The translations under genes were made by a program, and so were the position numbers. From the IMG/VR virus record IMGVR_UViG_3300043219_000566, positions 62,001 to 126,000 of that record: a stretch of DNA of 64,000 bases. One strand, 5' to 3'. The notes under the pieces are model-generated. The model made no database searches. It was not told the DNA's origin and was given only the letters and a program-made list of their open reading frames with translations. Below, one piece after another: positions 22,288-43,482 of the stretch; position 1 is the stretch's first letter, and every line of letters starts with the position of its first letter.

Positions 22288-22578
22288 CTAGAATTCGCGC
22301 ATGCGTTTGCCCACATACACCTTGATCTTATCGGCCTTGAGCACTTTTTTCAGCTGGTTCATCTGTGCAGGCGACCAGCCCCGAATCATCGCTTTGAACT
22401 CCTGGATCGCCTTCGAGCGAGCGTGCGCCCGGTTCGACGAGCAGCGACAGCCCTTGCCGCCCTTGATCTTCTTGGCCGGTCCTCGCAGTTGCGGCAAAGC
22501 CGCTACGACGTCGGGGCGCTGTAACAAGCTGACCAGCACTCCATTGGTAAGAGTTGTCGTCCGAGGTCCTTTAGGCAT
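22288..22578 (-). CDS. Small basic protein with GCRC motif
   Basis: Lys/Arg-rich 96-aa ORF coupled to the upstream stop. Confidence 0.75.
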   Translation of the reverse strand: MPKGPRTTTLTNGVLVSLLQRPDVVAALPQLRGPAKKIKGGKGCRCSSNRAHARSKAIQEFKAMIRGWSPAQMNQLKKVLKADKIKVYVGKRMREF

Positions 22579-23464
22579 CTGGCGTTACTCGTTCCACCGT
22601 GATGTCGGTAACGCTATTTAAGTGAACTGCTAGAGCAGCCGCAAGTTGCTCGACCTCGTGCTGGATGTTTTCCCACCCCTCCTGCAGCAACTCGGTCCGC
22701 CTGGTGACGTAGTCGAAGGTGCGTTTGCGGTAGAACGGCGGCCACTGCGCCTCGTCTGCGGCCCCCGCCGGATAGTCCACCAGATCGCCCGGACTACATA
22801 CCGCAATCGGACGGCTCTTGGTCTCGCGCCCACGATCCGGCAGGTCGTCCCGCCACAAGAAGATCTTTGCATCGGTGCCGTCGGCCGAGCAAGTCACGCG
22901 CATGCGGTAACCAACCGGGCTATCTTCCGGATAGGCTGCGACTGCGTCGCGCTGTAGCACGAAACGTCGCGCGCCCTGTAGCGAACTGGACGAGTCCAGG
23001 GACGTTGCCCCAGGCGAGAAATCGTAGATCTTCATTTCAGCTGCGCGCAACGGAGCCAAGATGCCCAGCGCGTTCGCTAGTTTCTGGATATCGGACAGCA
23101 GCAACTCCCAGAACTGATCCATGATGGTTTCGTTCCGGAACGTCCAGCTGCCCTGGTTGCTGCGGTAGAACCCCGTCGCCGGATCGGGAGTGCTCTGGGG
23201 CCAGGTCTCCATGTCCAACGGGCTGCAGATGCCGATGAAGTGCGTACGGCCGTTGCCGTCGAGCTTGTAGAGCAAGACGTCGTGGTCGGTGCCGCTGATC
23301 GACGATGAGCTGGGAAACGAGATCGTGGAAGACGAGGACTCGATGCCTTCGATCGGGTCCCACTCGCCCGGCATCCCGACTCGCACGTCCATCCGCGTGC
23401 CGTATTCCTGCAGATTCAGCGACTCGGGAACGGCGACCATCTTGCGGACAGCGTAGTCAGGCAT
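22571..23464 (-). CDS. Protein made of two copies of an unrecognised ~100-aa domain with Ser-rich linkers
   Basis: Repeats FIGICSPLDM...FYR...W...I..LA and PIAVCSPGDL...FYR...W..I....LA. Confidence 0.8.
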   Translation of the reverse strand: MPDYAVRKMVAVPESLNLQEYGTRMDVRVGMPGEWDPIEGIESSSSTISFPSSSSISGTDHDVLLYKLDGNGRTHFIGICSPLDMETWPQSTPDPATGFYRSNQGSWTFRNETIMDQFWELLLSDIQKLANALGILAPLRAAEMKIYDFSPGATSLDSSSSLQGARRFVLQRDAVAAYPEDSPVGYRMRVTCSADGTDAKIFLWRDDLPDRGRETKSRPIAVCSPGDLVDYPAGAADEAQWPPFYRKRTFDYVTRRTELLQEGWENIQHEVEQLAAALAVHLNSVTDITVERVTPDA

Positions 23465-23466
23465 CG

Positions 23467-25470
23467 CTAGCCTCCCGCCGAAGACGAGCTGCAGACGCTG
23501 TCGGTGCGGTAGCTTACTACCAGCGCCGGGGCAAGCAGACTTATGCTGCCGTCACGTCGCGCGCCGGGATCAGAGACGACTTCTTGAATCCACAAGCCGA
23601 AGTACTCGTTGCCACCGTCCGGGTCGTAATGCCAACGATCGACGAAGAACTGCATCATCGCAGTGATATTGGGAGGCAAGCTTACCACGCCATTCTGGAT
23701 CGTCGCCGCCAGACGGTCCCAAATTACGCCGTTGCGCGCCACAGCTGGGTCATCGACCCCAGAGAACTGGTCGACTGGCAAGTACCCAGGCTTGTAGATG
23801 TCGCGCACACGCAGCACTGCGTCCTCGCCTGTCTCGGAGGTATGCGCCGTCAAGAGCAAAGCCGCGCTCAGAATATGGGCGCAGCGCGGGATTGCTAGCG
23901 GGAAGCGCAAGAACGCATCCCAGTACTCGCCCGGGTCCAGGTTTCGGCCGAAGCGAATGAAGCCCAGGTCGTTGAATACAGTCTGAGTGCCGTGTTGGTT
24001 GAAGCGTGTTGCCGCGTCCTTGGTGTGCTCCAGGTAAATTAACACGGAGAACAGATCTGGATCGACCCAGTCCGACGACGAAGACACCGGTGCCAGAGAC
24101 GATGACGACAACGCCAACGGCGGCGGCACCGCAGAGAACGACGAAGACGAAGAAGACGGTCCGAACACTGGAGCTACCGAAGATGATTCCACTTCGATTG
24201 GCTCCGGGGCCGTAAACGTCTCGCTGTCTACAAACGCTGCCACTCCGGCCCCGCCGCGCAACACAGCGCCTCTACCAACCACCGGCACGCCGAACTCTAC
24301 CATGTCCAACGAGAGCGTAGCGCACTGCTGCTGGATCTCCTTCCAGGCGCGATCCAACAAAGCTGTCGTAGGCGCGAAAATCTCGGCCTGGCTCGTACGG
24401 AAAGCAAACGGGAATTGCGGCCTGGGCGTATCCTCGGGGATCAAAGTCAGATCATTGATATCGGCTACTCTCCGAAAAACCCGCTTGCGCAGCGTGATCC
24501 CGGGGTACGGTCGGCTGATCTCGTGAACGAAGATCTTGTTGATCACGCCTGAAGTCGACGTGCAGGCGATCAGCATGCGGAATAGGCTGCCCTCGAATCC
24601 CACCTTGTCGCGCAAGTTACCTTGGTCTAAGCGCTCGACCGTGAACGACGGGACTATAGCTGGAGTGAGCGACGAAGATGAAAGGAAAAAGACGCAGTAG
24701 CTAAATCCTGGCACTGGCCTAACGACGGAGTCGCCGCCCCAGTAGAACAAGCTCAGATCGATCGAGTCGCTATTGAACGTGCCATTCCGCCCGTTACCGG
24801 ACTCGTCGGCAATCAGCGCAGTTGGTACTCCACCAGCGTGCTCAGTGGAGCCGTCCCCCATGCGCCACCAACCCTCCAAGAAGGCAGATTTGGTGTAGCT
24901 GCCAGAATCGTCATCCAGCATCAAGCCATCGGCACCGTTGTACAGCGCGACAGCTTGCGCGAAGCTTAGCGTTGTGCTCCAGATACCGACCTCGTCGATC
25001 CAGCCGTCGAATTCCGTTTCGCTGTCGAAAAGCGTGGTGGAACGCACCGCGCCGATGAGAACGTCAGCTGCCTGCATCGTCGTGCCGGTGTACGCGTTCG
25101 TGGCCGCTTGCTGCCCATCGACGAAGACCCAGAGCTGAGACGCGCTGAACGAGATAACGATGTGGTGCCACTCGGCGTCGTTGAGCACGATGCCGAGCAG
25201 CCCGCCGATGTTGTAGTTGAAGATCTCCCCGCCGATGTACACGTCCAAGTCGATAGCGTTGATCGAAAATCCGTACTGGCAGACATTTTTGAACCCCTTG
25301 GCAACGACCATGTAGCTGCCGTTACCCGCAGCCCCAGTTTTGATCCAAGCCTGCATCGACCAGCTGTTCAATCCGGGCTGGAAGTTAAAAGCCGAATGCG
25401 CACCGACGGTAACGTATTCGTTTTCCAGTATCCGGAACTGCCCGGCCCAACAGTTTTGCAATGCACCCAT
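23467..25470 (-). CDS. LamG (concanavalin-like) domain protein, probable tail or receptor-binding protein
   Basis: SMQAWIK...WHHIVISF...LWVFVDG...FDGWIDEVGIWSTTLS is the Laminin_G_3 signature; C-terminal AFLRFPL..IP...ILSAALLLT (DNRLRE-like); poly-Ser linkers. Confidence 0.8.
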   Translation of the reverse strand: MGALQNCWAGQFRILENEYVTVGAHSAFNFQPGLNSWSMQAWIKTGAAGNGSYMVVAKGFKNVCQYGFSINAIDLDVYIGGEIFNYNIGGLLGIVLNDAEWHHIVISFSASQLWVFVDGQQAATNAYTGTTMQAADVLIGAVRSTTLFDSETEFDGWIDEVGIWSTTLSFAQAVALYNGADGLMLDDDSGSYTKSAFLEGWWRMGDGSTEHAGGVPTALIADESGNGRNGTFNSDSIDLSLFYWGGDSVVRPVPGFSYCVFFLSSSSLTPAIVPSFTVERLDQGNLRDKVGFEGSLFRMLIACTSTSGVINKIFVHEISRPYPGITLRKRVFRRVADINDLTLIPEDTPRPQFPFAFRTSQAEIFAPTTALLDRAWKEIQQQCATLSLDMVEFGVPVVGRGAVLRGGAGVAAFVDSETFTAPEPIEVESSSVAPVFGPSSSSSSFSAVPPPLALSSSSLAPVSSSSDWVDPDLFSVLIYLEHTKDAATRFNQHGTQTVFNDLGFIRFGRNLDPGEYWDAFLRFPLAIPRCAHILSAALLLTAHTSETGEDAVLRVRDIYKPGYLPVDQFSGVDDPAVARNGVIWDRLAATIQNGVVSLPPNITAMMQFFVDRWHYDPDGGNEYFGLWIQEVVSDPGARRDGSISLLAPALVVSYRTDSVCSSSSAGG

Positions 25471-25473
25471 GGG

Positions 25474-25878
25474 CTAATCCACGATTACGAACCGTTCGCG
25501 TTTCTTGGCTGCTTTCCCGGCGTACGCCAGGACGACGCGCTGAAACGGCTTGCGCTTCGCCGCGCTGACGAAGCCGCGGAGTTTTTGCAACTCCTGCATT
25601 CTATCGTGGTCGTAGAGCCACAGGAAAATCTGAGCGAATCCGTCCAGTATCGAGGCCTGAGCACGTAGAGCCTTGAGCCCGTCGCACTTGGTGCAGTCCG
25701 TATTCAGCGCAGACCCATCGAGCCCCTTCTTCTGCATGAACGTAGCCAGTTCCGTAACCGACGACAGCAGCTGAGCGAACGCCGGGCAGTGCTTGTAGAA
25801 GCCCTTGTGTCCCAGCAACCAGAGCACGTTGCTCTTGTTGCACAGGAAATCATCACTCGACACCCGCGATGTTCTCAT
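25474..25878 (-). CDS. Small basic protein with CTKC motif
   Basis: ORF coupled between the glycosyltransferase and LamG genes. Confidence 0.7.
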   Translation of the reverse strand: MRTSRVSSDDFLCNKSNVLWLLGHKGFYKHCPAFAQLLSSVTELATFMQKKGLDGSALNTDCTKCDGLKALRAQASILDGFAQIFLWLYDHDRMQELQKLRGFVSAAKRKPFQRVVLAYAGKAAKKRERFVIVD

Positions 25879-27817
25879 TGTACCCACGGAGATTAGCGTC
25901 ACTGATCTTGACCCCCTGATACGCCTGCGCAACCCCGTAACCTTGCTGTTGCAGCGCTACGCCCATCCAGATGTCGCCGCCGCGATGCTTGATGCGCGGG
26001 TCAGGCCAATTGGCTGCCTGGATCGCGTCGCGGGTCACCAGCCAGAACCCGCCGGTGCAGAAGTCACTTTTGTCCATCGGCGGACGCTTGGTTTTGTCCT
26101 GGTGAAGCGGGCGACCAGCATACCACCCAGCCTGTTTCAGCCAGTCCCACTGGTTGCCGCGCAGGTGCCAGTAGTACACCTTCCCGAACATGTGGTAGCC
26201 CCGGGGATAACGCGCGTCCTGCTGCAAAAACATCTCATCGACCTTGCTGCCGAGATGCAGCAGCCAGTTGCGATCGACGACATGCGAGTCGTCGTCGAAC
26301 CACATGACCCAGTCGGTCGTCAGCGGAGCCTCGGAGTCGTGGAACATGCGCCGCATCATCGGGTACTTGAAGACCTGCGGCGCGGCCTCGTAGATCCGCT
26401 CGACGTTGGGCTTGTCCTCCAGGAACGCCAGCACCTGCTTACGCGCGTCTTTGGTCGGTTCGTTGAGCGCGTAGCGCAGCTTGAACAAGTTGACGTCGAA
26501 GTGCGCGTAGAGGCTGTTCAGACAACGCAGCGCCAGGTCGGAATGCTTGCCGTAGGTCAAGCCGCACACGGTAATCGGGAACGTCAGGTGCTTGAATTTC
26601 ACCTCGTCCGGGCGCAGCGGAACCGTCGGCTCGCTGGGCCGCTTGCTCGGGCGTGCCTGCTTCGCCTTGGTCTTGGCGATTACAGGATGAGGATCTTGCA
26701 CCGGAGCCGGAGTACCCGCGTTCGGCACCTTCACAATCAAGTCTCTGATCGACGGCATCTGGTTCTCTCCGCAAGCGTGCTTTTCGTATTCCAGAATACT
26801 CTCAACGACTCGATCTACTGTAATCATGTCGAGACAACGCGGCAAAGGCACTCGGGCAGGAGTGTAAACGACGTTGCTGCAATTCTGCTCGGGCTTGCCC
26901 TCGGTAACCCGTGTTCGCCAGCAACCATGGTTCTTGCAGCACTTCAACGCGCCGACGGTGTGCAGGAACTTATGCGGCATGAATGGATGATCTACGAACC
27001 GCGCATCTTGATCCGGGTGCCAAGCCTCCCACTGCTTGGGAGTACCCGGCGGCTTCTTGATCCTCCCGCTAGCAAACGCCATGTTGCGCTGCAACGTCTC
27101 GACGTTGTAAGCCTCCCAGGTGTAGTGCTCGCGCCCGCCTGCGATCACCACAGTCGGCTTGCCGATCGCGGCCGCCAGGTGCATGAAGCAGGTAACCGGC
27201 GTCAGGACACCGCGGGCGTGCAAGCAAAGCCGAAACGCCTCGCGCAAGCTGGTTTTGCCCACCATGCTAAGCGCGCCGTTGAGCGGCGGGTGGTAGTGCC
27301 GCGCGCCGCCGCCGCTGGGCTTTCCGCCGATCTGCACGAAGTTGACTACGCCCTCCAGTCGCTGAATGACCTCCTGGTAACGCGCAGCGTCCCACCATTT
27401 GGTGGTAAAGTCGGCCTTGCCGCCCGAGACAACTACCCAGTAGTCGCCCTCGATCAACGGCTCGTTCAGTTCTTGCGGGCTCCAGTGCAGGTCGGGACGG
27501 AACTCGGTCAGCCGCACCTTCAGGTTGAGTTTCTTGTTCAGATCGTCGATGAAGCCCTGGATAAAATGCAGTCCGCACTGATTGGACCTGTGGATTAGCG
27601 GGTAACCCAGCTTGATTACGTTGGTCGTCTTGCGCGCCAAGTTCGCGATATACGGGTTGTTTTCCCAGACCTCTTTTGCCGTCGTTTCGACGCCGGTGAC
27701 GTACTGGTTGGGGTAACACCGATGCAGATCACGCAGGACCACCGACATCATCATGACGTCGCCTGGTGCTTGCGTATTGCGAAAAATCAGCGACCGGGGA
27801 CTACGTGCGCGCCGCAT
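25853..27817 (-). CDS. Bifunctional glycosyltransferase: N-terminal GT9 (GT-B, heptosyltransferase-like) plus C-terminal GT2-like (GT-A)
   Basis: GT9: APGDVMM...LRDLHRCYP, VWENNPYI, KWW, VGKTSLRE, FMHLAAAIGKPTVVI. GT-A: VMWFDDDSHV (DxD), CTGGFWLV, GGDIWMG. GAGGGAG RBS before ATG 27817. Confidence 0.85.
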   Translation of the reverse strand: MRRARSPRSLIFRNTQAPGDVMMMSVVLRDLHRCYPNQYVTGVETTAKEVWENNPYIANLARKTTNVIKLGYPLIHRSNQCGLHFIQGFIDDLNKKLNLKVRLTEFRPDLHWSPQELNEPLIEGDYWVVVSGGKADFTTKWWDAARYQEVIQRLEGVVNFVQIGGKPSGGGARHYHPPLNGALSMVGKTSLREAFRLCLHARGVLTPVTCFMHLAAAIGKPTVVIAGGREHYTWEAYNVETLQRNMAFASGRIKKPPGTPKQWEAWHPDQDARFVDHPFMPHKFLHTVGALKCCKNHGCWRTRVTEGKPEQNCSNVVYTPARVPLPRCLDMITVDRVVESILEYEKHACGENQMPSIRDLIVKVPNAGTPAPVQDPHPVIAKTKAKQARPSKRPSEPTVPLRPDEVKFKHLTFPITVCGLTYGKHSDLALRCLNSLYAHFDVNLFKLRYALNEPTKDARKQVLAFLEDKPNVERIYEAAPQVFKYPMMRRMFHDSEAPLTTDWVMWFDDDSHVVDRNWLLHLGSKVDEMFLQQDARYPRGYHMFGKVYYWHLRGNQWDWLKQAGWYAGRPLHQDKTKRPPMDKSDFCTGGFWLVTRDAIQAANWPDPRIKHRGGDIWMGVALQQQGYGVAQAYQGVKISDANLRGYNENIAGVE

Positions 27818-27827
27818 AGCTCCCTCG

Positions 27828-28373
27828 TTACTTACCGCAGCTGGAACAGCCCTTGTGCGGCGATCCCGCAGCAGCAGAAGACAACGAGGCCAGTTGACGT
27901 GCGGCCAGACCGTGCACCAGCGTAGCCGCAGCAGCATAAGCTACCGCAGATAGCATCATTGCGAATAGATGTTGCCGCCCGTTGACCGCCAACCAGAGAA
28001 GCAGCGCAGTCCAGAAAAACTGACAAAACGAGCAGCTCGTGAAGTAAATCAGCATGCGCGTTTTCCACGTGATCTGCATCAAGCTGGAGAGATGCCGGTG
28101 CTTGTGTTCGAGCACCGAGGGCTCCAGCGGTATCCGCGCAGCGTTCATATCACCCTGCGCTGCCTCGGGGTTCCACAGTATCTTGTGGCGTAGCTCCCAT
28201 TGCAGCTGTCGGATCAAAGCAGCATCGGTCGTATTGCGCAGCCTGAACCAGCGCAACAGCTCCGTGGCTAAAAACGACTGGAATAAAACCTTGGTCGCTC
28301 CAAGCGTGACGAAGACCCAAACTATCAACGGAACGACCTGATCCATTCCGCGTACATCAAGAACACTCATCAT
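27828..28373 (-). CDS. DUF1360-like three-TM membrane protein with two CxxC motifs
   Basis: CSFCQFFW before the second TM helix, and C-terminal GCSSCGK. Confidence 0.75.
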   Translation of the reverse strand: MMSVLDVRGMDQVVPLIVWVFVTLGATKVLFQSFLATELLRWFRLRNTTDAALIRQLQWELRHKILWNPEAAQGDMNAARIPLEPSVLEHKHRHLSSLMQITWKTRMLIYFTSCSFCQFFWTALLLWLAVNGRQHLFAMMLSAVAYAAAATLVHGLAARQLASLSSAAAGSPHKGCSSCGK

Positions 28374-28681
28374 GATCGCTGCTCCTGCATCTCGTGCCGC
28401 AGATGCGCAATAATCCGCACCTCCGGAGTAACGTTGTTGGGATCGACTGTGAAAGGATCATTCTTCCGTAATTGCCAGCCCGTGTCCAGTCGCTCCAAAA
28501 ATTCCGCGCCGCCGGGCTGCTCCGCGATCCACTTGCGCAGCTCCTCCATGGCTGTGTTGTCCAGCGCTTCGCGAGCTTTGTCCAACACAAAGTCACAGGC
28601 CAATAGCCCTAGCGCATCGTCGGGACAGTACGCCGTCAGATGCACGCGTTTCGTTCCCACGTTGATACTGATCACTGGCAC
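28370..28681 (-). CDS. Hypothetical protein
   Basis: GAGGAG RBS before GTG 28681, directly after the upstream stop. Confidence 0.7.
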   Translation of the reverse strand: MPVISINVGTKRVHLTAYCPDDALGLLACDFVLDKAREALDNTAMEELRKWIAEQPGGAEFLERLDTGWQLRKNDPFTVDPNNVTPEVRIIAHLRHEMQEQRS

Positions 28682-28692
28682 CGCACGCTCCT

Positions 28693-31600
28693 CTATTCGC
28701 AAGGATTGTAGGGAGAACAAGTTCCACCCTGCCAAACTCCGCCCATCAGATCGCACTCGCCCTCTCCGTCGACTAAAAAGCACGAGGCTCCCACGCAGCA
28801 AGCGCCCATGTTCTGCTCATCAGGTGACCAGCACGGAAGCGGATTGGTCCAGCTCTCGCACGGGCAGTCGCTGCCGTAATCCTGCCAACCCTGCGGGCTC
28901 AAGCTGTAACTCCGCAGCGTCGGAATACCAGGGCGTTCATCCGGGTATGGTGTGCTCAGCCAAAGATCGCCAGCGAACTCGTTCTCATGGCCCTCGAAAT
29001 ACCGGTAAGCCCGGCCGGAGCCATCGAGGTTCAAGTCCGTGGCAGCCCAGACCCTGTCGCCTTGACACACCGGTTGCATCCATACTGAGCACTCGCAAAC
29101 ATAGCCATCAGCGCAGGCCTGCGACCCCATCCCGCCCAAGTTACTATGGGTAGGTCCATAGTAAAAATTTAGTCCGCCGAGACGTGTTGTTTCGCATAAA
29201 CTTGGTTTTGAAGCGTTAGGATTAGGGTTATCGTACCCAAAGACCTCGACCGGCGGCGGCCAAGTTATCACCTCGGCCAAGGACCAACAGCAATTGTGGC
29301 AAACCCGGCAAGTACCGACAACATCCCACCACGACTGCGCGAGCCCCTCCCAGTAGACTCCCATCACCTCATGGAACCACATCCCGAGTTCCCCCACTGC
29401 CGGAAATAGCTCGCCGCACCCGTACATGTCGCCCAAGCAGTTGCCGCTTGCTTCCTTTCCAGGGGTGCCCGTGCTGACCTGGAACGGGCCTTCAAGCCAC
29501 TCGTGATCGAAGCGCGCTTTGCGAAACGGGCCGCCGTGGTTGCTATCGGGACCGCCGACGCAACGAGCGGGCGTACAGATGAATTTAGACCAGCCTTCGA
29601 CTTGCTCCATACGTACCTCAGCATACACATGTAGCAGGGGCGCATCGCATTCGTACGTCTCCAAATTCCGCCCGACGCAAAGCCTTGAGCGCGAAGACAT
29701 ACCGCACCCAGTGGTCGAACCTACGTTGCAAAACACGTTATGATGTACAGTCCACTCGTCAAAACTAGTTCCAGATACGAACCCTTCGCACGCCGAATAG
29801 CGATAGGCCACCATCCCGCACTGCCCCGCAGCTGGTCCGCCGTGTAATTCCCAGCATTCCGACCACGAAGGCCGACTCCAAGAATCGCAAATAAGCGTCG
29901 GCCACCATTCTTCATATACAACCTCTCCGTTTTCCGCTACTTTCATGTAGAAGCCCTGGTAGTATCCTTCACAGCACATGTGGGACGCGTCAATCGTCCA
30001 CGTTTCGACTTGCTCGATAGTATTCGCGCCGTATGAATGATAGTGCCCGCAGCCCAGTCCCATAAAGGTATCCGGCGTGCGCTTGCGGCTCTTGATTGTC
30101 GATTGAGTCCAAATGCCGTTGGTAATCAGGTATTCGACCGCGTTGATGATCTCCAAGATGTGGGTCGGCGCGATTACGTCACCCGGGCGTAATCCCACTT
30201 CGGCGTACCTGTTAAATATCCTCCCAGAGTTCGCGACAGCCGGTTCGTACCAGCAACGAAACAACGAAGGCATAACTTCCCAAGAATTGCCGCCACCGTA
30301 GAACGGATTCCGCGGTCCGGCTTCCGGGTCGTTGGGGACCCACGAGCGCGGCGGCGGCGCGCCGCTGCGAAAGAGCATGTCGATCCCGCGCCAAGACTTG
30401 CGCGCACGCTGCGAGCCGTGCGCGGGCTCGTCCGGGTGGTTGTGCAGCGGGCGTACGTCGTCCCACGCGGGCGGCTTCGGCTGAGTTACGCTGATCGGAG
30501 TCGGCCTAAAAGCGCCGCCAGGCGGATTAGGACTCGGGGGCGGATTGATTTCAATCTCATCGATCGGGTCCATACCCGCGCCGGTTTCGCCCCACTCGCC
30601 CTTGCCGCCGTGGATGTACTGCGGCCAAGGCGCGGAACCTGACCAGCGCCAGCGGATCGGCATATTCATACAGCAGTAACCATGGTTACTCGTGGGACTC
30701 GGGCGAGTTCGTGGGTTATGGTGCACGATCGTCTGGGCTTCCCAGATATCACCACAAAGATCCTGGTCTCCGCAAGTCTGTCCGACAATGAACGAGAGCG
30801 TAAAGCGCACCATGTTCAGCAACTCGGGCTGGATCGTCTCGGAACCATCGAAGTAGTAGCGGTCGGTTCCCTTGCGGCAGCTATTCAGCATCTCCGGCAG
30901 CCCGCGGCCGTACGGATTGTAGTGCGTAAACCAGGTTACCTTGTGGCGCTGCTCGTGAGACGGCGGAGACGAGCCGCCCGGCTCATAATACCACGTGCCG
31001 CCGACCCTGATTCGGATGTACCAATTCACTTCGGTACCTTGGCTGTACGGGCCAATCGTAGCCGAGTACTCCGGCCCCCCGGTCATCGGAGTCACTTCGC
31101 TGTCGTGAACCAACTCAACCTGCGAAGGTGTTGCCACGCCGCTGGGCTTGCTCCAATGAAACCGGATCTCCTCGCCGTTTACTTCAAAGATATCCGGCTC
31201 GGAACCGAACTCCCCATCCGCGCGCGGGTCACCTCCACCCCCACTGCCCTCTTCGCGCCCGTAGCTGCCGGGCGGAAAATAGGTCGTGTTGTGCTCGCCC
31301 CCAATCAACGCCATACCCGAGTCGCAACTCCGCGGAAGAATCGGGACCTGCGGCAGCGGATGCTGCCCAACACACGAGGGCGCTACATTTCCGATTGCCG
31401 CGTACTCCTTACCGCCGCCAGGAGCCGGGGGATACCCGGTCGGCGTAGCCTCCGCGTAGTCGGAGTAGTCGCAATCGACCAGACCGCCACTGTACGGATT
31501 CGGCTTTGGCGACTCCTCCCAGCTCTCTGGCCCCCACAGACAGCGCGGGTGCGTGCGAGCATGCCACTGCTGCTTCGGCTCGGTATCGTAACGCGGCCGC

Positions 31601-31857
31601 CCGCCCCACAGCGCGTACAGCAGCCCTTCGAGCTGCTCCATCGCTTTGGCGAATTGCCCACCCAGCGTTTCTTCCCAGTTGATCTCGTCCCCGCCCGCCG
31701 GAGGCGAGCCCGCCGGGAGAATGCGCTTGCCGGGGTGCATGTCCGACCACTTCATCGCGTAAGGCCGTTCAGCAACGTTCGGGTGAGCCAACCGCTCATC
31801 GATGTGCGAAGTGGTTCCGTACTGCGTGGGCTCCTCGAAGGTAACGTCGTGCGACAC
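28693..31857 (-). CDS. Large Cys/Trp/Gly-rich protein (1054 aa), probable tail fibre or receptor-binding protein
   Basis: About 40 Cys; Ig-like segment YSATIGPYSQGTEVNWYI; C-terminal GACC-type motif; located in the tail operon. Confidence 0.7.
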   Translation of the reverse strand: MSHDVTFEEPTQYGTTSHIDERLAHPNVAERPYAMKWSDMHPGKRILPAGSPPAGGDEINWEETLGGQFAKAMEQLEGLLYALWGGRPRYDTEPKQQWHARTHPRCLWGPESWEESPKPNPYSGGLVDCDYSDYAEATPTGYPPAPGGGKEYAAIGNVAPSCVGQHPLPQVPILPRSCDSGMALIGGEHNTTYFPPGSYGREEGSGGGGDPRADGEFGSEPDIFEVNGEEIRFHWSKPSGVATPSQVELVHDSEVTPMTGGPEYSATIGPYSQGTEVNWYIRIRVGGTWYYEPGGSSPPSHEQRHKVTWFTHYNPYGRGLPEMLNSCRKGTDRYYFDGSETIQPELLNMVRFTLSFIVGQTCGDQDLCGDIWEAQTIVHHNPRTRPSPTSNHGYCCMNMPIRWRWSGSAPWPQYIHGGKGEWGETGAGMDPIDEIEINPPPSPNPPGGAFRPTPISVTQPKPPAWDDVRPLHNHPDEPAHGSQRARKSWRGIDMLFRSGAPPPRSWVPNDPEAGPRNPFYGGGNSWEVMPSLFRCWYEPAVANSGRIFNRYAEVGLRPGDVIAPTHILEIINAVEYLITNGIWTQSTIKSRKRTPDTFMGLGCGHYHSYGANTIEQVETWTIDASHMCCEGYYQGFYMKVAENGEVVYEEWWPTLICDSWSRPSWSECWELHGGPAAGQCGMVAYRYSACEGFVSGTSFDEWTVHHNVFCNVGSTTGCGMSSRSRLCVGRNLETYECDAPLLHVYAEVRMEQVEGWSKFICTPARCVGGPDSNHGGPFRKARFDHEWLEGPFQVSTGTPGKEASGNCLGDMYGCGELFPAVGELGMWFHEVMGVYWEGLAQSWWDVVGTCRVCHNCCWSLAEVITWPPPVEVFGYDNPNPNASKPSLCETTRLGGLNFYYGPTHSNLGGMGSQACADGYVCECSVWMQPVCQGDRVWAATDLNLDGSGRAYRYFEGHENEFAGDLWLSTPYPDERPGIPTLRSYSLSPQGWQDYGSDCPCESWTNPLPCWSPDEQNMGACCVGASCFLVDGEGECDLMGGVWQGGTCSPYNPCE

Positions 31858-31859
31858 GG

Positions 31860-32258
31860 CTAGCCTCCGGGCGAACTCAGGGAAAATACGACTCCGGCTG
31901 GAACGCCTATGCTTTCTCCGGCAGGAATCAGGACACTCTGTTCCTGATACATGGCTAATTCAGTTCCCAGAAAAACGGCGATGTATCCTATGCGCCAGGT
32001 AACCGCTGGATCAACCGTCTGGTTCAAAAACGAGAACGCGCTGGATTGCACGTAAGGCGGAGCCCCGTCGTAGTACGTCCAGCTCAGCTGAACGAACACT
32101 GCCGTGAGTGGCACGTACTGCAGCAACCCGCCGAAGCTGCCGCCTTCCTTGGTCAAGCTCACGCCGCGCGTCAGCGGAATCGCAAGCCAGTTTCCCGCAG
32201 CTCCCGCATCACCGAAAGCCCGGTCAGCGATCTTCAGCGCAAAGTAGCTCGTAATCAC
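31860..32258 (-). CDS. Tail/baseplate-associated beta-sheet protein
   Basis: GTG start overlapping the upstream TGA with GAGG RBS; ends LIPAGESIGVPAGVVF, as seen in phage tail-associated proteins. Confidence 0.6.
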   Translation of the reverse strand: MITSYFALKIADRAFGDAGAAGNWLAIPLTRGVSLTKEGGSFGGLLQYVPLTAVFVQLSWTYYDGAPPYVQSSAFSFLNQTVDPAVTWRIGYIAVFLGTELAMYQEQSVLIPAGESIGVPAGVVFSLSSPGG

Positions 32259-33070
32259 CCAATTCGGCCTCGGTACTTGACGTAAATCGAGCTGCCCGGC
32301 CGCCAAAGAATCGGATGCACGAACCGAGAGTACGCGAGCAACGTATTGCTCGACTGGTCGACCACGAAAGCGATGGTCAACGGAAGCCCCCCGATTTTCC
32401 TGAAATCGCATAGCCATTGCAACTGCGGGTCGTCTTCCGGGTCGTCTTCCCAGGTGTCAAACCAACCCAGCCAGTCGTCCAGGTCTTCCCACGGCTCGGG
32501 GTAATAGCTAGTGCACTTGATCTGGGGCAAGTGCCAAGGGTACCCGAGAGTCACCGCACCCGACTCGGCATGCTCCCAGGGGTAATACCAGCCGCCGTAG
32601 TACGGATTACCGAGCCGCTCGACGATGTCGAGCGTAAAGATATTGTCCCAATCTCCGTGCGGACCCCACGACTGTCCGTTCTTGAACTTGGTCCAAGCCG
32701 ATTCAAAAACACCGCCGTGTGCTTCGCTGAACACGTTGAACCTTAGCGGCCGATGCCCCTCCGGATGACCGGCCGTTATATAGCCGAACGCCCGCCGCAT
32801 CATGTCGTTGAGCCCCGCGCCTTCTTGACAATCGTGCGTCACGTCAGCGTAAGTCAGCGACTCATTCAGCGCATGACCGATACAGCCCCCGTGATTAGGT
32901 CGATTTTCCCGCGAACTCAAATTCGGGCCAGCCAACCCCATTTCAAACGACATCTCGTCGCCGCCCGTGAACACGCGCTGCAGGATCTTGGTAGCCCCCT
33001 CGTACACCAGCGTGTTCGGCAACGTCTGCACCGGGCCGTCTTCGGTGAACTTGACCAAGAACTCGCCCAT
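32255..33070 (-). CDS. Tail/baseplate-associated protein
   Basis: N-terminal NTLVYEGATKILQRVF motif, similar to NTVQYEGFDALGKIM in 45510..46109. Confidence 0.65.
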   Translation of the reverse strand: MGEFLVKFTEDGPVQTLPNTLVYEGATKILQRVFTGGDEMSFEMGLAGPNLSSRENRPNHGGCIGHALNESLTYADVTHDCQEGAGLNDMMRRAFGYITAGHPEGHRPLRFNVFSEAHGGVFESAWTKFKNGQSWGPHGDWDNIFTLDIVERLGNPYYGGWYYPWEHAESGAVTLGYPWHLPQIKCTSYYPEPWEDLDDWLGWFDTWEDDPEDDPQLQWLCDFRKIGGLPLTIAFVVDQSSNTLLAYSRFVHPILWRPGSSIYVKYRGRIG

Positions 33071-35325
33071 TAGAACGTCCCGCGGTAGTGGCTGCGCGAG
33101 CAGGCATACAGGGTCTGGTTAGACGCGTTCGACACCGTCCAGAACACCACGACATCGCCAGTCACGAGCGCCGACACCCACTGTCCACCGTAGCCCTGCT
33201 CCTCAACGTTCAACATGTTGGAAGCGATTTGCGTACCGCCGGGCCGGTCGATCCATTCAAAATCGGCGTTCATCCAGACCTCGACTGCCGAGTACACAAA
33301 GGGCGGCAAGCAGCCGTACTTGTCCGTGATCCGAGCGAACCGCCCGCCGGTGCCGCCGCTGCCGCCGCCCGGCGTGATAAACAGCCGCAGTTCTTCGTTG
33401 AACGCGCAGTCCCCGGCAAACGGGCCGTCTACCCAGTCCTGCACCGGCAGCGCGCTGTACTCCAGCGAGTTGAGCGGCTCAGCTTCCGAGTTGCCGACAT
33501 CCGAAATGTGATAGAAGTTCACATCCGGGCTGCGCTTGCCGCAGGGAATGAACAAGCTGAGCTGCAGATCGAGATTGCAGTCGTCATCGAACTCGTTCTT
33601 GGCCCAGTGCCCATGCGCCCAGCTCGGTCCGTACGAGTCGCCCCACTGCAGCGAGTTGCGAAACCACTCCAAGTTCTGGTGGATGTTGACCGAGCCCGCT
33701 GGAAGCAAGCTGTAGTACGGATGGTACTCGTAACGATCCGGATCAGCTGTCTGGTAGCGCTCCTGGCGGTCTTTCATGATCAACGATACGAAGGGATTTG
33801 CGAGCAGATCGTCGTCGAGCGAGCGATGCGCGCCGCCTGTCGGACATGGCATATTCAACGACAGATCCAAAATCGGCAGGCACGGAGTTAGCTGCCCGGC
33901 GACTTTACCCTCGCGAACTCGAACAGTGATTTGCGGCCCACCGAAAGCCCAGCTGCGCTCGGGAAAGTCCAAGTCAGCCGGTAGCTCGGTGTAAAAGTAC
34001 GAATCGAGGAACGTCACGTCGCCCGGGACGCTGTCAGTCTCGACCGACACCGGACAAGGCAGATTCAACGCCAACTGCAAATCAGGCGAGCACAGCTCGG
34101 CTCCAGAGCCGGAGTCGTAGAAGTTCACTCGTAGATTGGCTGTTGGCTCCTGCGCCCAAGGCAGCAGACCACCCGAGCCCGAGAACTCGATCGCAACCTG
34201 ACTAGTGGCAGTGAACTCGACTGGGCAAGGGAAGTACAACCGCAGATCCAGACTGGGGTAGCAATCGTCGGCGCATTGCGAAGACGATCCCACTATGTAG
34301 AACGTACCGGACGGTGGCCCCGAGAGAGTATATCGCTTTACGACTTTGAGTTTAGGCGTGTGCCAGTCGACTGGGCAAGGAATATTCAAACTGAGGCCCA
34401 ATTGGAAATCGCAACTGCCGGGAGACTGTTCCGCCCACAGCTCGATCTCCGGTCGCCGGTCAGCCGGAATACAACTGATTTCCTTGCCGTAACTGGTTTC
34501 CTGGGGCGTGATAGTGCCAGGACACGGCAGCGCCATGTCGACTACAAGCTCGTAGTCGCAGCCGCCGGTCCCAGTGACTTGCAGCGTCGTGCCACCGGCA
34601 CCTAACCCAGGCTCATATACAGCAGTTCCGATTCCGCCCGTGAGTCCGGTTGGACACGGCAGACGCAAGTTGAAGGACAACACGAAGTCGCAGGGACCGA
34701 TGCCCGAGGAGCTGTAGTAGTCGTCAGCCGGGATCACCAGCAGCTCGGCCTCTCCTTCGTCGAGCGGGATACTTCCATCGAACTCGACGGTCCCTATGCC
34801 GCCGACCAAGTCGGTCGGACACGGCAAACCGATGCTGAGGCTGATCCCCAGATCACAATCGCCGCTGTCGATCGTCTCCGCTGTACCTCCGGCAGTCTCC
34901 AGCGCCGGGTCGTACTCGACGTCGATGTACGCTTCGGTAAACGAGACGAAACACGGGATCGACAGCTGAAAATCAATGTGGGGCTCGCAGTAGTCGCTCG
35001 TCGGGTAGGTAAGCACAACGCTGAAAGCGTCGGCTACCGCGCTGCTCTGGTTGGGCAAGAACACGCTGCCGGTAACGACCATCGGGTAGCAACCGAGATC
35101 AATCGGCGGAATCGGGATCGGCGGGTCGGTGGGTGTGACAATTGTGTCCGGCGGACCAGGGAAAGCGCACGAGTCGACGAATTCGTAATCGCCGATTTCC
35201 GGGTTGTCAGGCGCGCACTCTTTGTCGAACGCCGCGTCCCCGCGATCAGGACCTTCGCCGACCTCGCCAGCAACCGCGGACGATGACGATGATCCCACTC
35301 CGAGATTCAACGGCCACCAGGGCAT
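33070..35325 (-). CDS. Repeat protein with nine C-x10-P-C motifs, probable tail fibre or shaft
   Basis: Repeats read directly from the translation; about 25 Cys; N-terminal GSSSSSA. Confidence 0.75.
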   Translation of the reverse strand: MPWWPLNLGVGSSSSSAVAGEVGEGPDRGDAAFDKECAPDNPEIGDYEFVDSCAFPGPPDTIVTPTDPPIPIPPIDLGCYPMVVTGSVFLPNQSSAVADAFSVVLTYPTSDYCEPHIDFQLSIPCFVSFTEAYIDVEYDPALETAGGTAETIDSGDCDLGISLSIGLPCPTDLVGGIGTVEFDGSIPLDEGEAELLVIPADDYYSSSGIGPCDFVLSFNLRLPCPTGLTGGIGTAVYEPGLGAGGTTLQVTGTGGCDYELVVDMALPCPGTITPQETSYGKEISCIPADRRPEIELWAEQSPGSCDFQLGLSLNIPCPVDWHTPKLKVVKRYTLSGPPSGTFYIVGSSSQCADDCYPSLDLRLYFPCPVEFTATSQVAIEFSGSGGLLPWAQEPTANLRVNFYDSGSGAELCSPDLQLALNLPCPVSVETDSVPGDVTFLDSYFYTELPADLDFPERSWAFGGPQITVRVREGKVAGQLTPCLPILDLSLNMPCPTGGAHRSLDDDLLANPFVSLIMKDRQERYQTADPDRYEYHPYYSLLPAGSVNIHQNLEWFRNSLQWGDSYGPSWAHGHWAKNEFDDDCNLDLQLSLFIPCGKRSPDVNFYHISDVGNSEAEPLNSLEYSALPVQDWVDGPFAGDCAFNEELRLFITPGGGSGGTGGRFARITDKYGCLPPFVYSAVEVWMNADFEWIDRPGGTQIASNMLNVEEQGYGGQWVSALVTGDVVVFWTVSNASNQTLYACSRSHYRGTF

Positions 35326-35341
35326 TCATCACGTCCGTTTG

Positions 35342-36232: not shown

Positions 36233-36242
36233 CGATATGCTC

Positions 36243-37984: not shown

Positions 37985-37993
37985 CGTAGCGCG

Positions 37994-38230: not shown

Positions 38231-38241
38231 GATTTCTCCAA

Positions 38242-41139: not shown

Positions 41140-42530
41140 CAACTACCGCCTTTGTTCGTGTTGCTGATCAGCTGCACGTTTGCCTGCAGCACGGAAGGCT
41201 CCGTGGCCGCGCATGCCAGCACCGAAGCGTCGATTTGCACATTAGCGTCCTCGACCCGGTCAGGACCGCTGACGCGCACCGAGAACGTGAACAGCTTGTA
41301 ATGCCCGCCTTTGATGGCAGAGTTGTCCACGAAAGTGTAAGTCCCGTCGCCGTTGTCAGTCGGGTCTACCTGCCCGTAGTTGTCCTGGGTGTTGTAGACC
41401 ATCCCGCTGCCAGGAACGTACTCGAACGTGTAGTCGCCGCCCGCGAACGAGATATCGACCGTCGCGCCTTCCTGCAGACAATCCTCCATGTTGCCGACCC
41501 AGACCTGGATAGTGACCAGCCAGCCAGTGAAGGCGTAGCCGAACAGCTGCGATACGCAACCTTCGCCCACGCACGCGACCCGCAGGTCCCATTCGGCCTT
41601 AGTAGTTTCGTAGGCCGCGAGCACGTCCGCCCAGATATCCTTGATAGCCAGGCCCTCATCCTTCAGCTGCCGGATGTGTTCCAGCAACTCAGAGAAATCG
41701 TCGCACTGACAGCAAGCCCGGCAGTCGTTGTGGATCTTGATCACGAAGGGCCGCGGCTCATTTCCGACGATGCGACGATGAATTCGGTAGCAGTCGTCAC
41801 CGGCGATAAAGAAGTTCCCCTCGTCACCAGCGATCTGATTGATCGTACGAATCTCGGCCAACGAACCGCCGCAATCCGTTTCGAGTTTGCCAGTACCCGC
41901 GCCAGGAATAGCGCTGATCTTGATCCTCCGAACGTCCGGGCGCAGCACAGACTTGGTTAAATCGCGCGCGGTAGTCAACGGCGTAGACGGGTCTACTTCG
42001 AGCTGGATATTGGTCCCCTCGATCAGCTCGCCGATCTCGCCCAGATTCACCCAAGTTCCGGCCGTAAGCCCGATGGAATTCACCCGGGCGGGTTGACGAC
42101 CGATGCAGCGAGGCACGAACTCCGGATAGGGCGAGGAGAACTCGATTGGCGAAGACGCGGTAGACAGCGGGCTGTAATCGTGATTCAAGACGAGCGTAAG
42201 TGCCAGACCTTCGTCCTCGTCGGTGTAAACCAGCACTCGGTAGTCGCCGATTACGCTGTTGGAAGTCGGCGTAACATCGAGAAGCGCGCCAGTTTCGGTG
42301 TTGTAGAGCACCAAGTCCCAGGACGACGCCGGGTCCAGGCTCACGAAGCGCCAATGATAATCGTGGTCCTCGTCGGCGTTGTCCGATCGAAAAGTCAGGT
42401 AGGCGTCCAGGAAAAACGGTCGGGGATCGTTGGCCTGGTAGGGCGCACTGAGAGTTAGGTCCGCGGCATCCGTAAACGGATACGCGCGGCTCTTGTTGCG
42501 CTCCAGCCACTCGCCTTCCATGCCCGGCAC
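41139..42530 (-). CDS. Tail-associated protein, paralog family member 2
   Basis: NKSRAYPF; LIEGTN; IRTINQIAGDEG; CRACCQC then a coiled coil. Confidence 0.8.
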   Translation of the reverse strand: MPGMEGEWLERNKSRAYPFTDAADLTLSAPYQANDPRPFFLDAYLTFRSDNADEDHDYHWRFVSLDPASSWDLVLYNTETGALLDVTPTSNSVIGDYRVLVYTDEDEGLALTLVLNHDYSPLSTASSPIEFSSPYPEFVPRCIGRQPARVNSIGLTAGTWVNLGEIGELIEGTNIQLEVDPSTPLTTARDLTKSVLRPDVRRIKISAIPGAGTGKLETDCGGSLAEIRTINQIAGDEGNFFIAGDDCYRIHRRIVGNEPRPFVIKIHNDCRACCQCDDFSELLEHIRQLKDEGLAIKDIWADVLAAYETTKAEWDLRVACVGEGCVSQLFGYAFTGWLVTIQVWVGNMEDCLQEGATVDISFAGGDYTFEYVPGSGMVYNTQDNYGQVDPTDNGDGTYTFVDNSAIKGGHYKLFTFSVRVSGPDRVEDANVQIDASVLACAATEPSVLQANVQLISNTNKGGS

Positions 42531-42540
42531 GTAATTTCCT

Positions 42541-43482
42541 CTAATCGCATGGGACGATGTTCCCCAGCTTAGAGGCCAGGATCACATCCCGCATTTGTTC
42601 CACATTGCCCAGCGCGCGCTCAGCGTACGCGCGCTGTGTGGCGATCTGTGACGCCAGGCGCGCTAGCTCGTCGCGCAACACCTGCAGTTCGTTGCATCCA
42701 CAACAGGGATCGGCGCAGGTGTCCTCTAGTTCAATGCCGTGCGAGATCCCGGCCCAGTTAATGCAGTTCGCCGTCCGCACCAGAAAATCACCGGTGTTCG
42801 GATCGGGTCCAATGCCGTTGATAGTCTCGATGCACCGCCCGCCGGGGGCGTCCGGGCATTCGCACTCTGCTTCGTAATCTGTGCTCGGGACAGCAGAGAT
42901 CCGCAACTGCTTCGCACCGGACGGCGGCGTAATCAGGGTCAGTCCAATGTTGTCGCCTGCCAGGATCTCGACGTCACCCTGGATCAGATCGCTTTCCTCG
43001 TTGTCCGCGTTGACGATACGCAACGCTGACACGCCCTGGAGACTGGGGCGAAAGACCGTGGGTAACAAGCGGGCATTTCCCACGCTGAAGCTGTACGAGC
43101 CTCCGTACTTCTTGATCTCGTCGAAACGCCCGATAGCGATGCGCCCCACGCTGTCGGCAAAGTCGCCGGTGCCCTCGATGTAGTAAGCCGCGTTCTCGGT
43201 GTGACCGGCCTCGGTGATCGCGCGAGTCGCAATAGCGGCAGCCTCACCGTCGTAGCCGATGGAGATGATGACCCCACCCGCGAAAACCGTCAGCTGCTTG
43301 AGGTAGAACTTCGACACGTCGTACGTTTGGGCAGGCACCGGAAAGATCAGATCAACGATCAGCTCCCTGGGGATCTCCAGCGAGTCGGAGTCGTCCTTCA
43401 AGGAGACATCGTCCATGAACGGAAACCGCCGGTTGCGGTTGTTGTTCAACCAGTCTTCATGGATGACGCCGCCAGCAACCAT
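42541..43482 (-). CDS. Tail-associated protein, paralog family member 1
   Basis: NRNRRFPF; GDVEILAGDN; IETINGIGPD; CADPCCGC then a coiled coil. Confidence 0.8.
   Translation of the reverse strand: MVAGGVIHEDWLNNNRNRRFPFMDDVSLKDDSDSLEIPRELIVDLIFPVPAQTYDVSKFYLKQLTVFAGGVIISIGYDGEAAAIATRAITEAGHTENAAYYIEGTGDFADSVGRIAIGRFDEIKKYGGSYSFSVGNARLLPTVFRPSLQGVSALRIVNADNEESDLIQGDVEILAGDNIGLTLITPPSGAKQLRISAVPSTDYEAECECPDAPGGRCIETINGIGPDPNTGDFLVRTANCINWAGISHGIELEDTCADPCCGCNELQVLRDELARLASQIATQRAYAERALGNVEQMRDVILASKLGNIVPCD

What the first reader, a model, noticed from the sequence alone, without database searches (positions are those of the whole stretch)
22288..43482. Possible phage-encoded disulfide-formation relay for Cys-rich tail fibres
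Seen: the tail block encodes unusually Cys-rich proteins (about 40 Cys in 28693..31857, about 25 in 33070..35325, CCxC clusters in 41139 and 42541). Two genes downstream of the 1054-aa fibre is a three-TM protein (27828..28373) with CSFC at the start of a TM helix and a second CSSC at its C-terminus. Small basic proteins with CTKC (25474) and CRC (22288) are nearby, and a paralogous CGFC membrane protein lies at 6882. By the positive-inside rule the Arg/Lys-rich first loop is cytoplasmic, which puts both CxxC pairs on the side where virions assemble. Established: DsbB and VKOR use a CxxC at a helix start, and poxviruses encode a cytoplasmic disulfide pathway for virion proteins. Inference: this may be a bacteriophage analogue, and a possible function for DUF1360-like proteins.
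Basis: inference. Interest (0 to 1): 0.72.

Follow-up and report, generated by a model that had tools for sequence, protein, structure and literature searches.

The report
Cysteine-rich phage fibre with CxxC membrane partner
Phages of planctomycete (Phycisphaerae) bacteria always encode a very cysteine-rich tail-tip protein together with a small cysteine-bearing protein and a membrane protein carrying an invariant CxxC motif, which suggests, but does not prove, a phage-encoded system that handles the fibre's cysteines, possibly by forming disulfide bonds.

Summary
The 1054-aa protein has 43 Cys and the 751-aa protein 26. The 181-aa protein at 27828..28373 has CSFC at the N-cap of its second TM helix and CSSC in a disordered C-terminal tail. 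It belongs to a divergent DUF1360 subfamily of about 127 clusters, and the first CxxC is invariant in 85 of 85 aligned members. Family-wide charge bias puts both Cys sites in the cytoplasm.

The main new result is a translationally coupled three-gene cassette. It holds an 850-1054-aa fibre with 3.1-5.1% Cys, a roughly 103-aa soluble protein with an invariant Cys, and the DUF1360-like protein. It recurs in every related locus with context: two jumbo phages, siphophage-like contigs, and prophages in Phycisphaerae genomes. In five of those genomes, all six full-length fibre genes have both partners downstream.

No DsbB, VKOR, Erv/ALR or thioredoxin similarity exists in sequence or fold, and no electron acceptor is shown. 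My best reading is a fibre-maturation cassette acting through thiol chemistry, at about 0.4. Metal handling, superinfection exclusion and lysis remain rivals.

The parts
28693..31857 (-). 1054-aa cysteine-rich putative tail-tip/fibre protein (43 Cys, also rich in Pro, Gly and Trp), first gene of the conserved cassette
   Evidence: Homologues of 841-1054 aa with 26-49 Cys (3.1-5.1%) occur in 19 of 19 aligned relatives, with 8 Cys columns invariant. In siphophage-like contigs and prophages it is the last large gene after the tape measure and distal tail genes. No Pfam, PHROG or PDB match.
28370..28681 (-). ~103-aa soluble partner protein with an invariant Cys (C27), a near-invariant Cys (AYCPDD) and often a C-terminal EQCG/EQCA tail, second gene of the cassette
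   Evidence: AGGAG then a GTG start 12 nt after the fibre stop; its stop overlaps the start of the next gene (ATGA). 101 clusters at 48-76% identity, many named from Phycisphaerae/Planctomycetota MAGs. Alignment A5. No 19-residue window reaches a TM-like hydropathy (maximum 1.15). No Pfam, PHROG or PDB match.
27828..28373 (-). 181-aa DUF1360-like membrane protein: TM1, long cytoplasmic helical hairpin, invariant CxxC at the N-cap of TM2, TM3, and a basic Gly-rich disordered tail bearing 1-2 Cys. Third gene of the cassette
33070..35325 (-). 751-aa cysteine-rich protein with nine units in which two Cys lie exactly 12 residues apart (C-x11-C, mostly ending PCP). These units hold 18 of its 26 Cys. 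Found only in the jumbo-phage lineage; a possible further client
   Evidence: 26 of 26 Cys conserved in L003. No family or PDB match.
6882..7265 (-). Distant DUF1360-like paralog (CGFC at a TM helix start) without a C-terminal Cys tail. Not linked to the cassette
   Evidence: (PF07098 E=0.135).

Best explanation
The three genes 28693..31857, 28370..28681 and 27828..28373 form a fibre-maturation cassette of phages that infect Phycisphaerae (Planctomycetota). The large Cys-rich protein is the tail-tip or receptor-binding fibre. The two small proteins are its dedicated accessory factors. The DUF1360-like protein sits in the inner membrane with its N-terminus outside. Its invariant CxxC lies at the cytoplasmic end of TM2, and a flexible Gly-rich, Cys-bearing C-terminal arm reaches into the cytoplasm. 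The ~103-aa soluble protein, with its own invariant Cys, acts as adaptor between it and the fibre. Together they would carry out thiol-disulfide chemistry on the fibre's 26-49 cysteines before lysis, either introducing or proofreading disulfides. Electrons would probably pass from the arm Cys to the CxxC and on to a membrane acceptor such as a quinone. Shown: the anatomy, the invariance, the predicted topology and the obligate gene linkage. Inferred: the redox activity, the direction of electron flow, the acceptor, and that the fibre's cysteines end up as disulfides.
For: (1) Linkage. The same order of fibre, ~101-110-aa protein and ~178-190-aa DUF1360-like protein is seen in the window, L003, L004, L008-10, L011, L012, L013, L014 and L015. 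In five Phycisphaerae genomes, 12 of 12 full-length DUF1360-like hits have the partner directly upstream, 9 of 12 have the fibre, and 6 of 6 full-length fibres have both partners downstream. Among 201 genomes sampled, all 5 fibre-positive genomes are among the 7 DUF1360-like-positive ones. The cassette travels between jumbo myovirus-like and ~40-kb siphovirus-like genomes as a unit. (2) Coupling. The stop and start overlap (ATGA), there is an RBS directly after the fibre stop, and promoter- and terminator-like sites are not in excess of shuffled sequence. (3) Cysteine specificity. Fibres have 3.1-5.1% Cys, while the other tail proteins of the same loci have 0-2.2% and tape measures 0-0.3%. Cys is among the best-conserved residues of the fibre. 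(4) All three proteins carry constrained cysteines. CxxC is present in 85 of 85 members at 24% mean identity, with conserved R106, Y110, Q/H118 and W121 around it. Partner C27 is invariant. (5) 84 of 85 members keep at least one Cys in a disordered basic Gly-rich tail, with variable number and spacing. This recalls the variable shuttle cysteines of Erv-family oxidases (Erv2 CGC, Erv1 CxxC, plant Erv1 Cx4C; from my own knowledge, not tested here). (6) Topology by charge bias places both sites in the cytoplasm. (7) Precedent: disulfide-linked tail fibres and baseplate in cyanophage Pam3 (PMC9942802). (8) The source is a marine sediment metagenome, where air oxidation after lysis cannot be relied on (inference).
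Against: There is no similarity to any known thiol oxidoreductase in sequence or fold. No cofactor or quinone site is demonstrated. 23 of 85 members have a single tail Cys and one has none, so a two-Cys shuttle is not universal. One intact partner+DUF1360-like pair in G135 lacks a fibre, although it lies in a rearranged prophage remnant. The bacterial cytoplasm is reducing, so a cytoplasmic oxidase would have to outcompete thioredoxin. Metal binding by the same cysteines is not excluded.
Confidence: 0.4

Rival explanations
1. Fibre-assembly cassette without redox catalysis. The CxxC plus tail cysteines bind a metal (Zn, Fe or an Fe-S cluster). The metal either forms a structural or redox-sensing site of a membrane-anchored chaperone, or is delivered to metal sites formed by the fibre's cysteines and histidines.
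For: The same linkage evidence applies as for the best explanation. Many tails read CPxCG, the classic zinc-knuckle consensus. The sites are predicted cytoplasmic, where Cys clusters are usually metal-bound. The fibre also has invariant His residues. Tail-tip and fibre proteins with metal sites are known (lambda gpL Fe-S, T4 gp37 Fe, gp12 Zn; from my own knowledge).
Against: Tail Cys number and spacing are not conserved, and 24 of 85 members have one or none. AF2 leaves the tail disordered and away from the CxxC at pLDDT 42-54. The fibre's cysteines are mostly isolated with irregular spacing, or occur as fixed two-Cys units in the 751-aa protein, not as paired CxxC knuckles.
Confidence: 0.2
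2. The two small genes protect the lysogen or infected cell. The membrane protein and its soluble partner block infection by related phages, for example by masking the receptor or blocking DNA entry, like the exclusion genes found next to receptor-binding genes in other phages.
For: The pair lies at the very end of the tail module, and in prophages directly at the prophage-host junction. That is a typical place for moron or exclusion genes (HK97 gp15, T5 llp, phi80 cor; from my own knowledge). One intact pair persists without the fibre in G135.
Against: The pair is translationally coupled to the late fibre operon. It is conserved in order and content across jumbo and small phages down to 25-30% identity, and is never found with a different fibre type. 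It is also present in a 216-kb phage for which no sign of lysogeny was seen. The invariant CxxC and Cys-bearing tail have no role in this model.
Confidence: 0.12
3. The DUF1360-like protein is a holin-type lysis or lysis-timing protein (N-out, C-in, 3 TM, basic C-terminal tail), and the ~103-aa protein is its regulator.
For: The topology and charged C-terminal tail resemble class I holins. Its position after the last tail gene is where many siphophages keep their lysis cassette. One of 85 members gives a weak Phage_holin_3_6 hit, E=0.0039.
Against: No endolysin-type Pfam domain is recorded next to it in any of nine loci. L008 has a separate run of small membrane and lipoprotein-like ORFs further downstream that could be the lysis genes. 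An 80-residue conserved cytoplasmic hairpin and an invariant CxxC are not holin traits. Strict linkage to one fibre family is unexplained.
Confidence: 0.08
4. The protein is a membrane-anchored anti-sigma-like regulator whose Cys site senses redox state.
For: A sigma-70 family gene directly follows the cassette in L011 and L012.
Against: No sigma gene follows in the window, L003, L004, L008 or L013-L015. The HxxxCxxC motif of zinc anti-sigma factors is absent, since position 110 is Y, W or F. In L011 and L012 the sigma gene opens the next module, followed by YqaJ/RecT genes.
Confidence: 0.03

Closest known systems
DUF1360 (Pfam PF07098), uncharacterised small membrane proteins of Firmicutes, Actinobacteria and their phages
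   Same: A conserved CxxC at the start of a TM helix followed by aromatic residues. 30 of 85 family members hit the Pfam model. The best fold matches in AFDB and BFVD are DUF1360 proteins, including those of Mycobacterium phages Badfish and Fortunato.
   Different: The window protein itself scores below the Pfam cut-off (15.4 vs 21 bits). This subfamily is longer (~180 aa), with an inserted ~80-residue cytoplasmic helical hairpin and a Cys-bearing Gly-rich tail. It is fixed in a cassette with a Cys-rich fibre. No function is known for DUF1360.
DsbB and VKOR, quinone-linked membrane disulfide generators
   Same: A membrane protein with CxxC at the N-terminus of a TM helix near the membrane surface, and further cysteines on a flexible segment on the same side.
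   Different: No profile match and no structural match. It has 3 TM helices rather than a four-helix bundle. The active side is predicted cytoplasmic, not periplasmic. Quinone binding is unknown.
Poxvirus (and other large DNA virus) cytoplasmic disulfide pathway E10R-A2.5L-G4L, and the Erv/ALR sulfhydryl oxidases
   Same: The concept is the same: virus-encoded proteins that would oxidise cysteines of virion proteins in the cytoplasm. Both are three-component and membrane-associated, with a small adaptor carrying few Cys and an invariant CxxC plus variable shuttle cysteines.
   Different: The genome has no Erv/ALR domain and no thioredoxin fold. No FAD motif is evident. The host is a bacterium. 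Activity is untested.
Tail-fibre assembly chaperone cassettes (lambda Tfa, T4 gp38/gp57A, Mu/P2 fibre chaperones)
   Same: Small genes immediately downstream of the fibre gene, co-inherited with it across unrelated phage backbones.
   Different: No sequence similarity. One component is an integral membrane protein, and all three proteins carry constrained cysteines.
Cyanophage Pam3 disulfide-linked tail fibres and baseplate (PMC9942802)
   Same: It shows that tailed-phage fibres can depend on disulfides, since they are DTT-sensitive.
   Different: Pam3 has few cysteines and no dedicated catalyst was reported. Here there are 26-49 Cys per fibre plus two linked accessory genes.

Membership tests
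DUF1360 (PF07098) | Score at or above the Pfam gathering threshold (21 bits) | tested here: inconclusive
   P0001 gets no hit by hmmscan and 15.4 bits, E=0.0027, in the six-frame search. However, 30 of 85 members of its family hit PF07098, best E=1.1e-6.
DUF1360 (PF07098) | Conserved CxxC at the start of a TM helix, and the shared fold | tested here: met
   C114 and C117 are invariant in 85 of 85 members. The Pfam match covers exactly this helix. DUF1360 models are the top fold hits (TM 0.47/0.59, probability 1.0).
DsbB (PF02600) / VKOR (PF07884) | Sequence-profile membership | tested here: not met
   No match at E<=1 anywhere in the 216.5-kb genome. No Pfam hit for P0001.
DsbB / VKOR | Four-TM helical bundle fold | tested here: not met
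   The AF2 model has 3 TM helices plus a cytoplasmic hairpin. No DsbB or VKOR chain appears among the 50 listed Foldseek PDB matches (none at E<=0.001) or in the 48,161-chain VIA search.
DsbB / VKOR | CxxC at the N-terminus of a TM helix, plus a second cysteine set on a mobile segment on the same side | tested here: inconclusive
   The CxxC feature is met. The second set is a tail with 0-2 or more Cys of variable spacing.
DsbB / VKOR | Quinone binding and reduction | not testable with these tools
Erv/ALR-based viral disulfide pathway (poxvirus E10R type) | FAD-binding Erv/ALR domain, and a thioredoxin-fold downstream component | tested here: not met
   PF04777 and PF00085 give no match in the genome.
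Tail-fibre assembly chaperone cassette | Encoded directly downstream of the fibre gene and co-inherited with it | tested here: met
Tail-fibre assembly chaperone cassette | Similarity to known chaperone families | tested here: not met
   No Pfam, PHROG or PDB match for the partner or the membrane protein.
Tail-fibre assembly chaperone cassette | Needed for fibre folding or assembly | not testable with these tools
   This needs expression or genetic experiments.
Holin | Small TM protein encoded with an endolysin | tested here: not met
   No lysozyme, amidase or peptidase domain is recorded in the neighbours of nine loci.

The most novel reading that the evidence does not exclude
DUF1360 proteins are a new, structurally unrelated class of membrane-embedded thiol oxidases whose active site faces the cytoplasm. 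Phages of Planctomycetes use one, with a small Cys adaptor, to build a heavily disulfide-bonded receptor-binding fibre inside a reducing cell. This would be a bacterial-virus counterpart of the poxvirus pathway. The same chemistry might then explain DUF1360 genes in actinophages and sporulating Firmicutes, which also assemble extracellular structures in the cytoplasm.
Probability: 0.22. Interest if true: 0.88.

Novelty: new variant of a known kind. Interest (0 to 1): 0.62.

Why it matters
How tailed phages obtain correctly paired disulfides in virion proteins that fold in a reducing cytoplasm is essentially unaddressed, and no phage-encoded catalyst is known. This cassette gives a concrete, compact and testable candidate: three genes that can be expressed in E. 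coli. It offers the first functional lead for DUF1360. It assigns a previously unannotated 216-kb phage and many prophages to Phycisphaerae hosts. It also marks a receptor-binding protein family for a phylum whose phages are almost unknown. If the redox idea fails, the strict linkage still defines a new type of fibre accessory module with a membrane component.

Tried and rejected
- Complex prediction of the membrane-protein alignment with the partner alignment gave no verdict (score 0.00). I do not use it as evidence either way.
- The first AF2 run with a two-sequence alignment was poor (pLDDT 63).
- The search for related loci failed with the family alignment, which had no conserved stretch. 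With the fibre alignment it found nothing in genome contigs or viral contigs.
- GenBank phage searches found nothing for an 8-kb stretch (window 27001..35000), the fibre, the membrane protein or the paralog.
- ESM Atlas feature searches gave no usable hits.
- PDB sequence and profile searches gave nothing significant for the fibre, the 751-aa protein, the partner or the membrane protein.
- I considered and rejected a GtrA-like flippase or glycosylation role with the adjacent GT9 gene. GT9 follows the cassette only in the two jumbo phages, not in the seven other lineages.
- The CTKC and CRC proteins are not relay members. They are absent from the small-phage cassettes, and the CRC motif is not conserved.
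- I also set aside the idea that Cys-richness is general for the tail block or merely genome-wide. Genome Cys is high (1.77%), but the fibre stands 2-3 times above it, while tape-measure-like proteins have none.
- The literature holds no functional data for DUF1360.
- I did not test whether canonical DUF1360 genes in other phages sit near Cys-rich proteins.


Full report
**What the window is.** The window is bases 62001-126000 of a 216.5-kb virus record rated complete by CheckV. It has about 60% G+C, and the only run found to hold it is a marine sediment metagenome. Phage hallmarks are present: a large terminase at 7717..9912, a baseplate-J protein at 47935..49593, and a weak, sub-threshold VgrG-type DUF2345 match at 59605..62433. 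Genes from about 47.9 kb down to 22 kb run on the minus strand below baseplate J, so calling them a tail block is reasonable. Most have no Pfam or PHROG match. GenBank phages hold nothing similar.

**Checking the observation.**
- The cysteine counts are right: 43 in the 1054-aa protein and 26 in the 751-aa protein.
- Against a crude genome-wide ORF background of 1.77% Cys, these two are enriched (P=7.5e-7 and 1.2e-3).
- The two proteins with 'CCxC clusters' are not enriched (P=0.2 and 0.11).
- Many other proteins of this phage reach 3-5% Cys. The putative tape-measure-sized 1242-aa protein has none.
- Against the nearest relative, a 73.9-kb contig (L003), 41 of 43 and 26 of 26 cysteines are kept at 71% and 66% overall identity.
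- The 751-aa protein has nine units with two Cys exactly 12 residues apart, holding 18 of its 26 Cys.

**The membrane protein.** 27828..28373 encodes 181 aa with CSFC at 114 and CSSC at 176.
- A whole-library profile search found 127 representatives of about 170-190 aa.
- In an 85-sequence alignment with 24% mean column identity, C114 and C117 are the only invariant columns. R106, Y/W/F110, Q/H118, F120 and W121 around them are strongly conserved.
- With that alignment AF2 gives pLDDT 92.9. The model has TM1 (10-31), a long helical hairpin (34-63 and 85-113), C114 at the N-cap of TM2 (115-131), TM3 (136-168) and a disordered tail.
- Family-wide K+R counts are 0.2, 15.5, 0.3 and 3.2 for the N-terminus, loop 1, loop 2 and the tail. 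This places the hairpin, the CxxC and the tail in the cytoplasm.
- 84 of 85 members keep at least one Cys in the last 30 residues, usually flanked by Gly and 0-6 residues from the end. Number and spacing vary: CxxC 25, Cx3-6C 25, CxC 4, other multiples 7, single 23, none 1.

**Family assignment.**
- P0001 itself is below the DUF1360 threshold, but 30 of 85 relatives hit PF07098.
- DUF1360 models are the best fold matches in AFDB and among viral proteins.
- Nothing in the PDB matches. DsbB and VKOR do not appear by Foldseek or by an exhaustive structural scan; only generic helical hairpins with Z<=7.7 do.
- The genome has no DsbB, VKOR, Erv/ALR or thioredoxin domain.
- The CGFC protein at 6882 resembles the family only over the 22-residue CxxC helix.

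**The conserved cassette.** In the window, the fibre stop is followed by AGGAG and a GTG start for a ~103-aa gene. That gene's stop overlaps the start of the membrane-protein gene (ATGA). The same three genes in the same order occur in every related locus with enough context:

| Locus | Type |
|---|---|
| L003 | jumbo-phage relative |
| L004 | prophage in a Phycisphaerae MAG |
| L008-10, L011, L012 | 14.6-49-kb siphophage-like contigs |
| L013, L014, L015 | prophages |

- In the small phages and prophages the cassette follows the tape measure and distal tail genes and ends the tail module.
- Fibre homologues have 26-49 Cys (3.1-5.1%). Other tail proteins at the same loci have 0-2.2%.
- In five Phycisphaerae genomes, 12 of 12 full-length membrane-protein hits have the partner directly upstream and 9 of 12 have the fibre.
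- The other three are decaying copies. Two carry in-frame stops, and one lies in a rearranged remnant next to a terminase.
- 6 of 6 full-length fibres have both partners downstream.
- Of 201 Phycisphaerae genomes sampled, 5 have the fibre, and all 5 are among the 7 with the membrane protein.
- The partner is the best conserved of the three (mostly 53-66% identity over about 100 clusters). It has an invariant Cys, a near-invariant second Cys, and often a C-terminal EQCG/EQCA tail.
- Source names and flanking genes point to Phycisphaerae/Planctomycetota hosts.

**Interpretation.** A unit that moves intact between unrelated phage backbones, is translationally coupled to a fibre gene, and is never seen with another fibre type behaves like a fibre with its dedicated accessory factors. 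All three proteins carry constrained cysteines, and the client is exceptionally Cys-rich. Cysteine chemistry is therefore the most economical common denominator.
- The layout is an invariant CxxC at a helix N-cap at the membrane surface, plus a mobile Cys-bearing arm of variable form. This is the logic of known disulfide generators (DsbB, VKOR, Erv family; from my own knowledge), although the fold is unrelated.
- The variable tail argues against a fixed Zn(Cys)4 knuckle as the conserved feature.
- Disulfide-dependent fibres exist in cyanophage Pam3.
- Activity, electron acceptor and the final state of the fibre's cysteines are all inferred. Metal handling would fit much of the same evidence.
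- I put the thiol-redox maturation model at about 0.4, and the broader claim of 'dedicated fibre accessory cassette' at about 0.65.

The DUF1360 and topology calls also hold. The DsbB/VKOR analogy is functional at most. The proposed extra relay members are not part of the unit, and the true middle component was missed.

**Novelty.** Fibre-plus-chaperone cassettes and viral disulfide pathways are both known kinds. A phage fibre cassette with an integral-membrane CxxC protein of the DUF1360 fold and a small Cys adaptor has not been described in the literature I could search. I rate it a new variant of a known kind. It would be categorically new as an enzyme class if the oxidase activity were shown.

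Noticed in passing
window 33070..35325 (-): The 751-aa protein has nine units with two Cys exactly 12 residues apart around an alternating hydrophobic stretch (C-x11-C, mostly ending PCP). The units are spaced about 44-90 residues apart and look like a stack of Cys-stapled beta units. There is no database match.
   Followed up: partly
window 28693..28830 (-), residues ~1009-1054 of the fibre: An extra C-terminal module with 7 Cys (GACC..SC..C..C..C pattern) is present only in the two jumbo-phage fibres and absent from the prophage and siphophage homologues.
   Followed up: partly
L013:9309-10010 and L014:9328-9987: A conserved ~220-233-aa ORF (39% identical between the two loci) sits between fibre and partner in some prophages. 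It has a weak precomputed Toprim Pfam hit in L014 and what reads as Toprim-like acidic motifs. It is absent from the window and L015, and may be a selfish insertion.
   Followed up: partly
window 25853..27817 (-) and 23467..25470 (-): A 654-aa protein with a family-9 glycosyltransferase (heptosyltransferase) domain and a 667-aa Laminin_G_3/ConA-like protein follow the cassette in the tail block. The true start of the GT9 gene is the ATG at 27817, not 27937. This raises possible virion or host-surface glycosylation.
   Followed up: partly
window 54478..58206 (-): A 1242-aa protein has no cysteine at all and a weak sub-threshold KaiC/ATPase hit. It is possibly the tape measure or an internal protein.
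   Followed up: no
G135 (4.85-Mb Phycisphaerae contig): C2:25350-26357, 67139-68003, 687555-687848, 3387667-3392184, 4769810-4772474: There are five copies or remnants of the cassette in one genome, one with an in-frame TAG, one with a truncated fibre, and one intact pair next to a terminase in a rearranged remnant. This indicates repeated lysogeny and decay.
   Followed up: partly
L011:10565-11422 and L012:10575-11435: A sigma-70 family gene directly follows the cassette in two siphophage-like contigs and opens a module with YqaJ/RecT recombination genes.
   Followed up: no
L015:3809-4060 (-): A small Cys_rich_CPCC (PF14206) ORF lies on the opposite strand inside the tail module of the Phycisphaerales prophage.
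   Followed up: no
whole genome G000, and window 1261..2952 (-): This phage has a high overall Cys content (1.77% in crude ORFs), with about 30 proteins of 200 aa or more above 2.5% Cys. They include a 563-aa protein with 20 Cys a few kb from the DUF1360-like paralog.
   Followed up: no
L012:6579-9596, residues 260-306: There is a weak, sub-threshold CBM_56 carbohydrate-binding-module hit in a fibre homologue (E=2.9e-4). It is consistent with a receptor-binding role for the N-terminal third.
   Followed up: no
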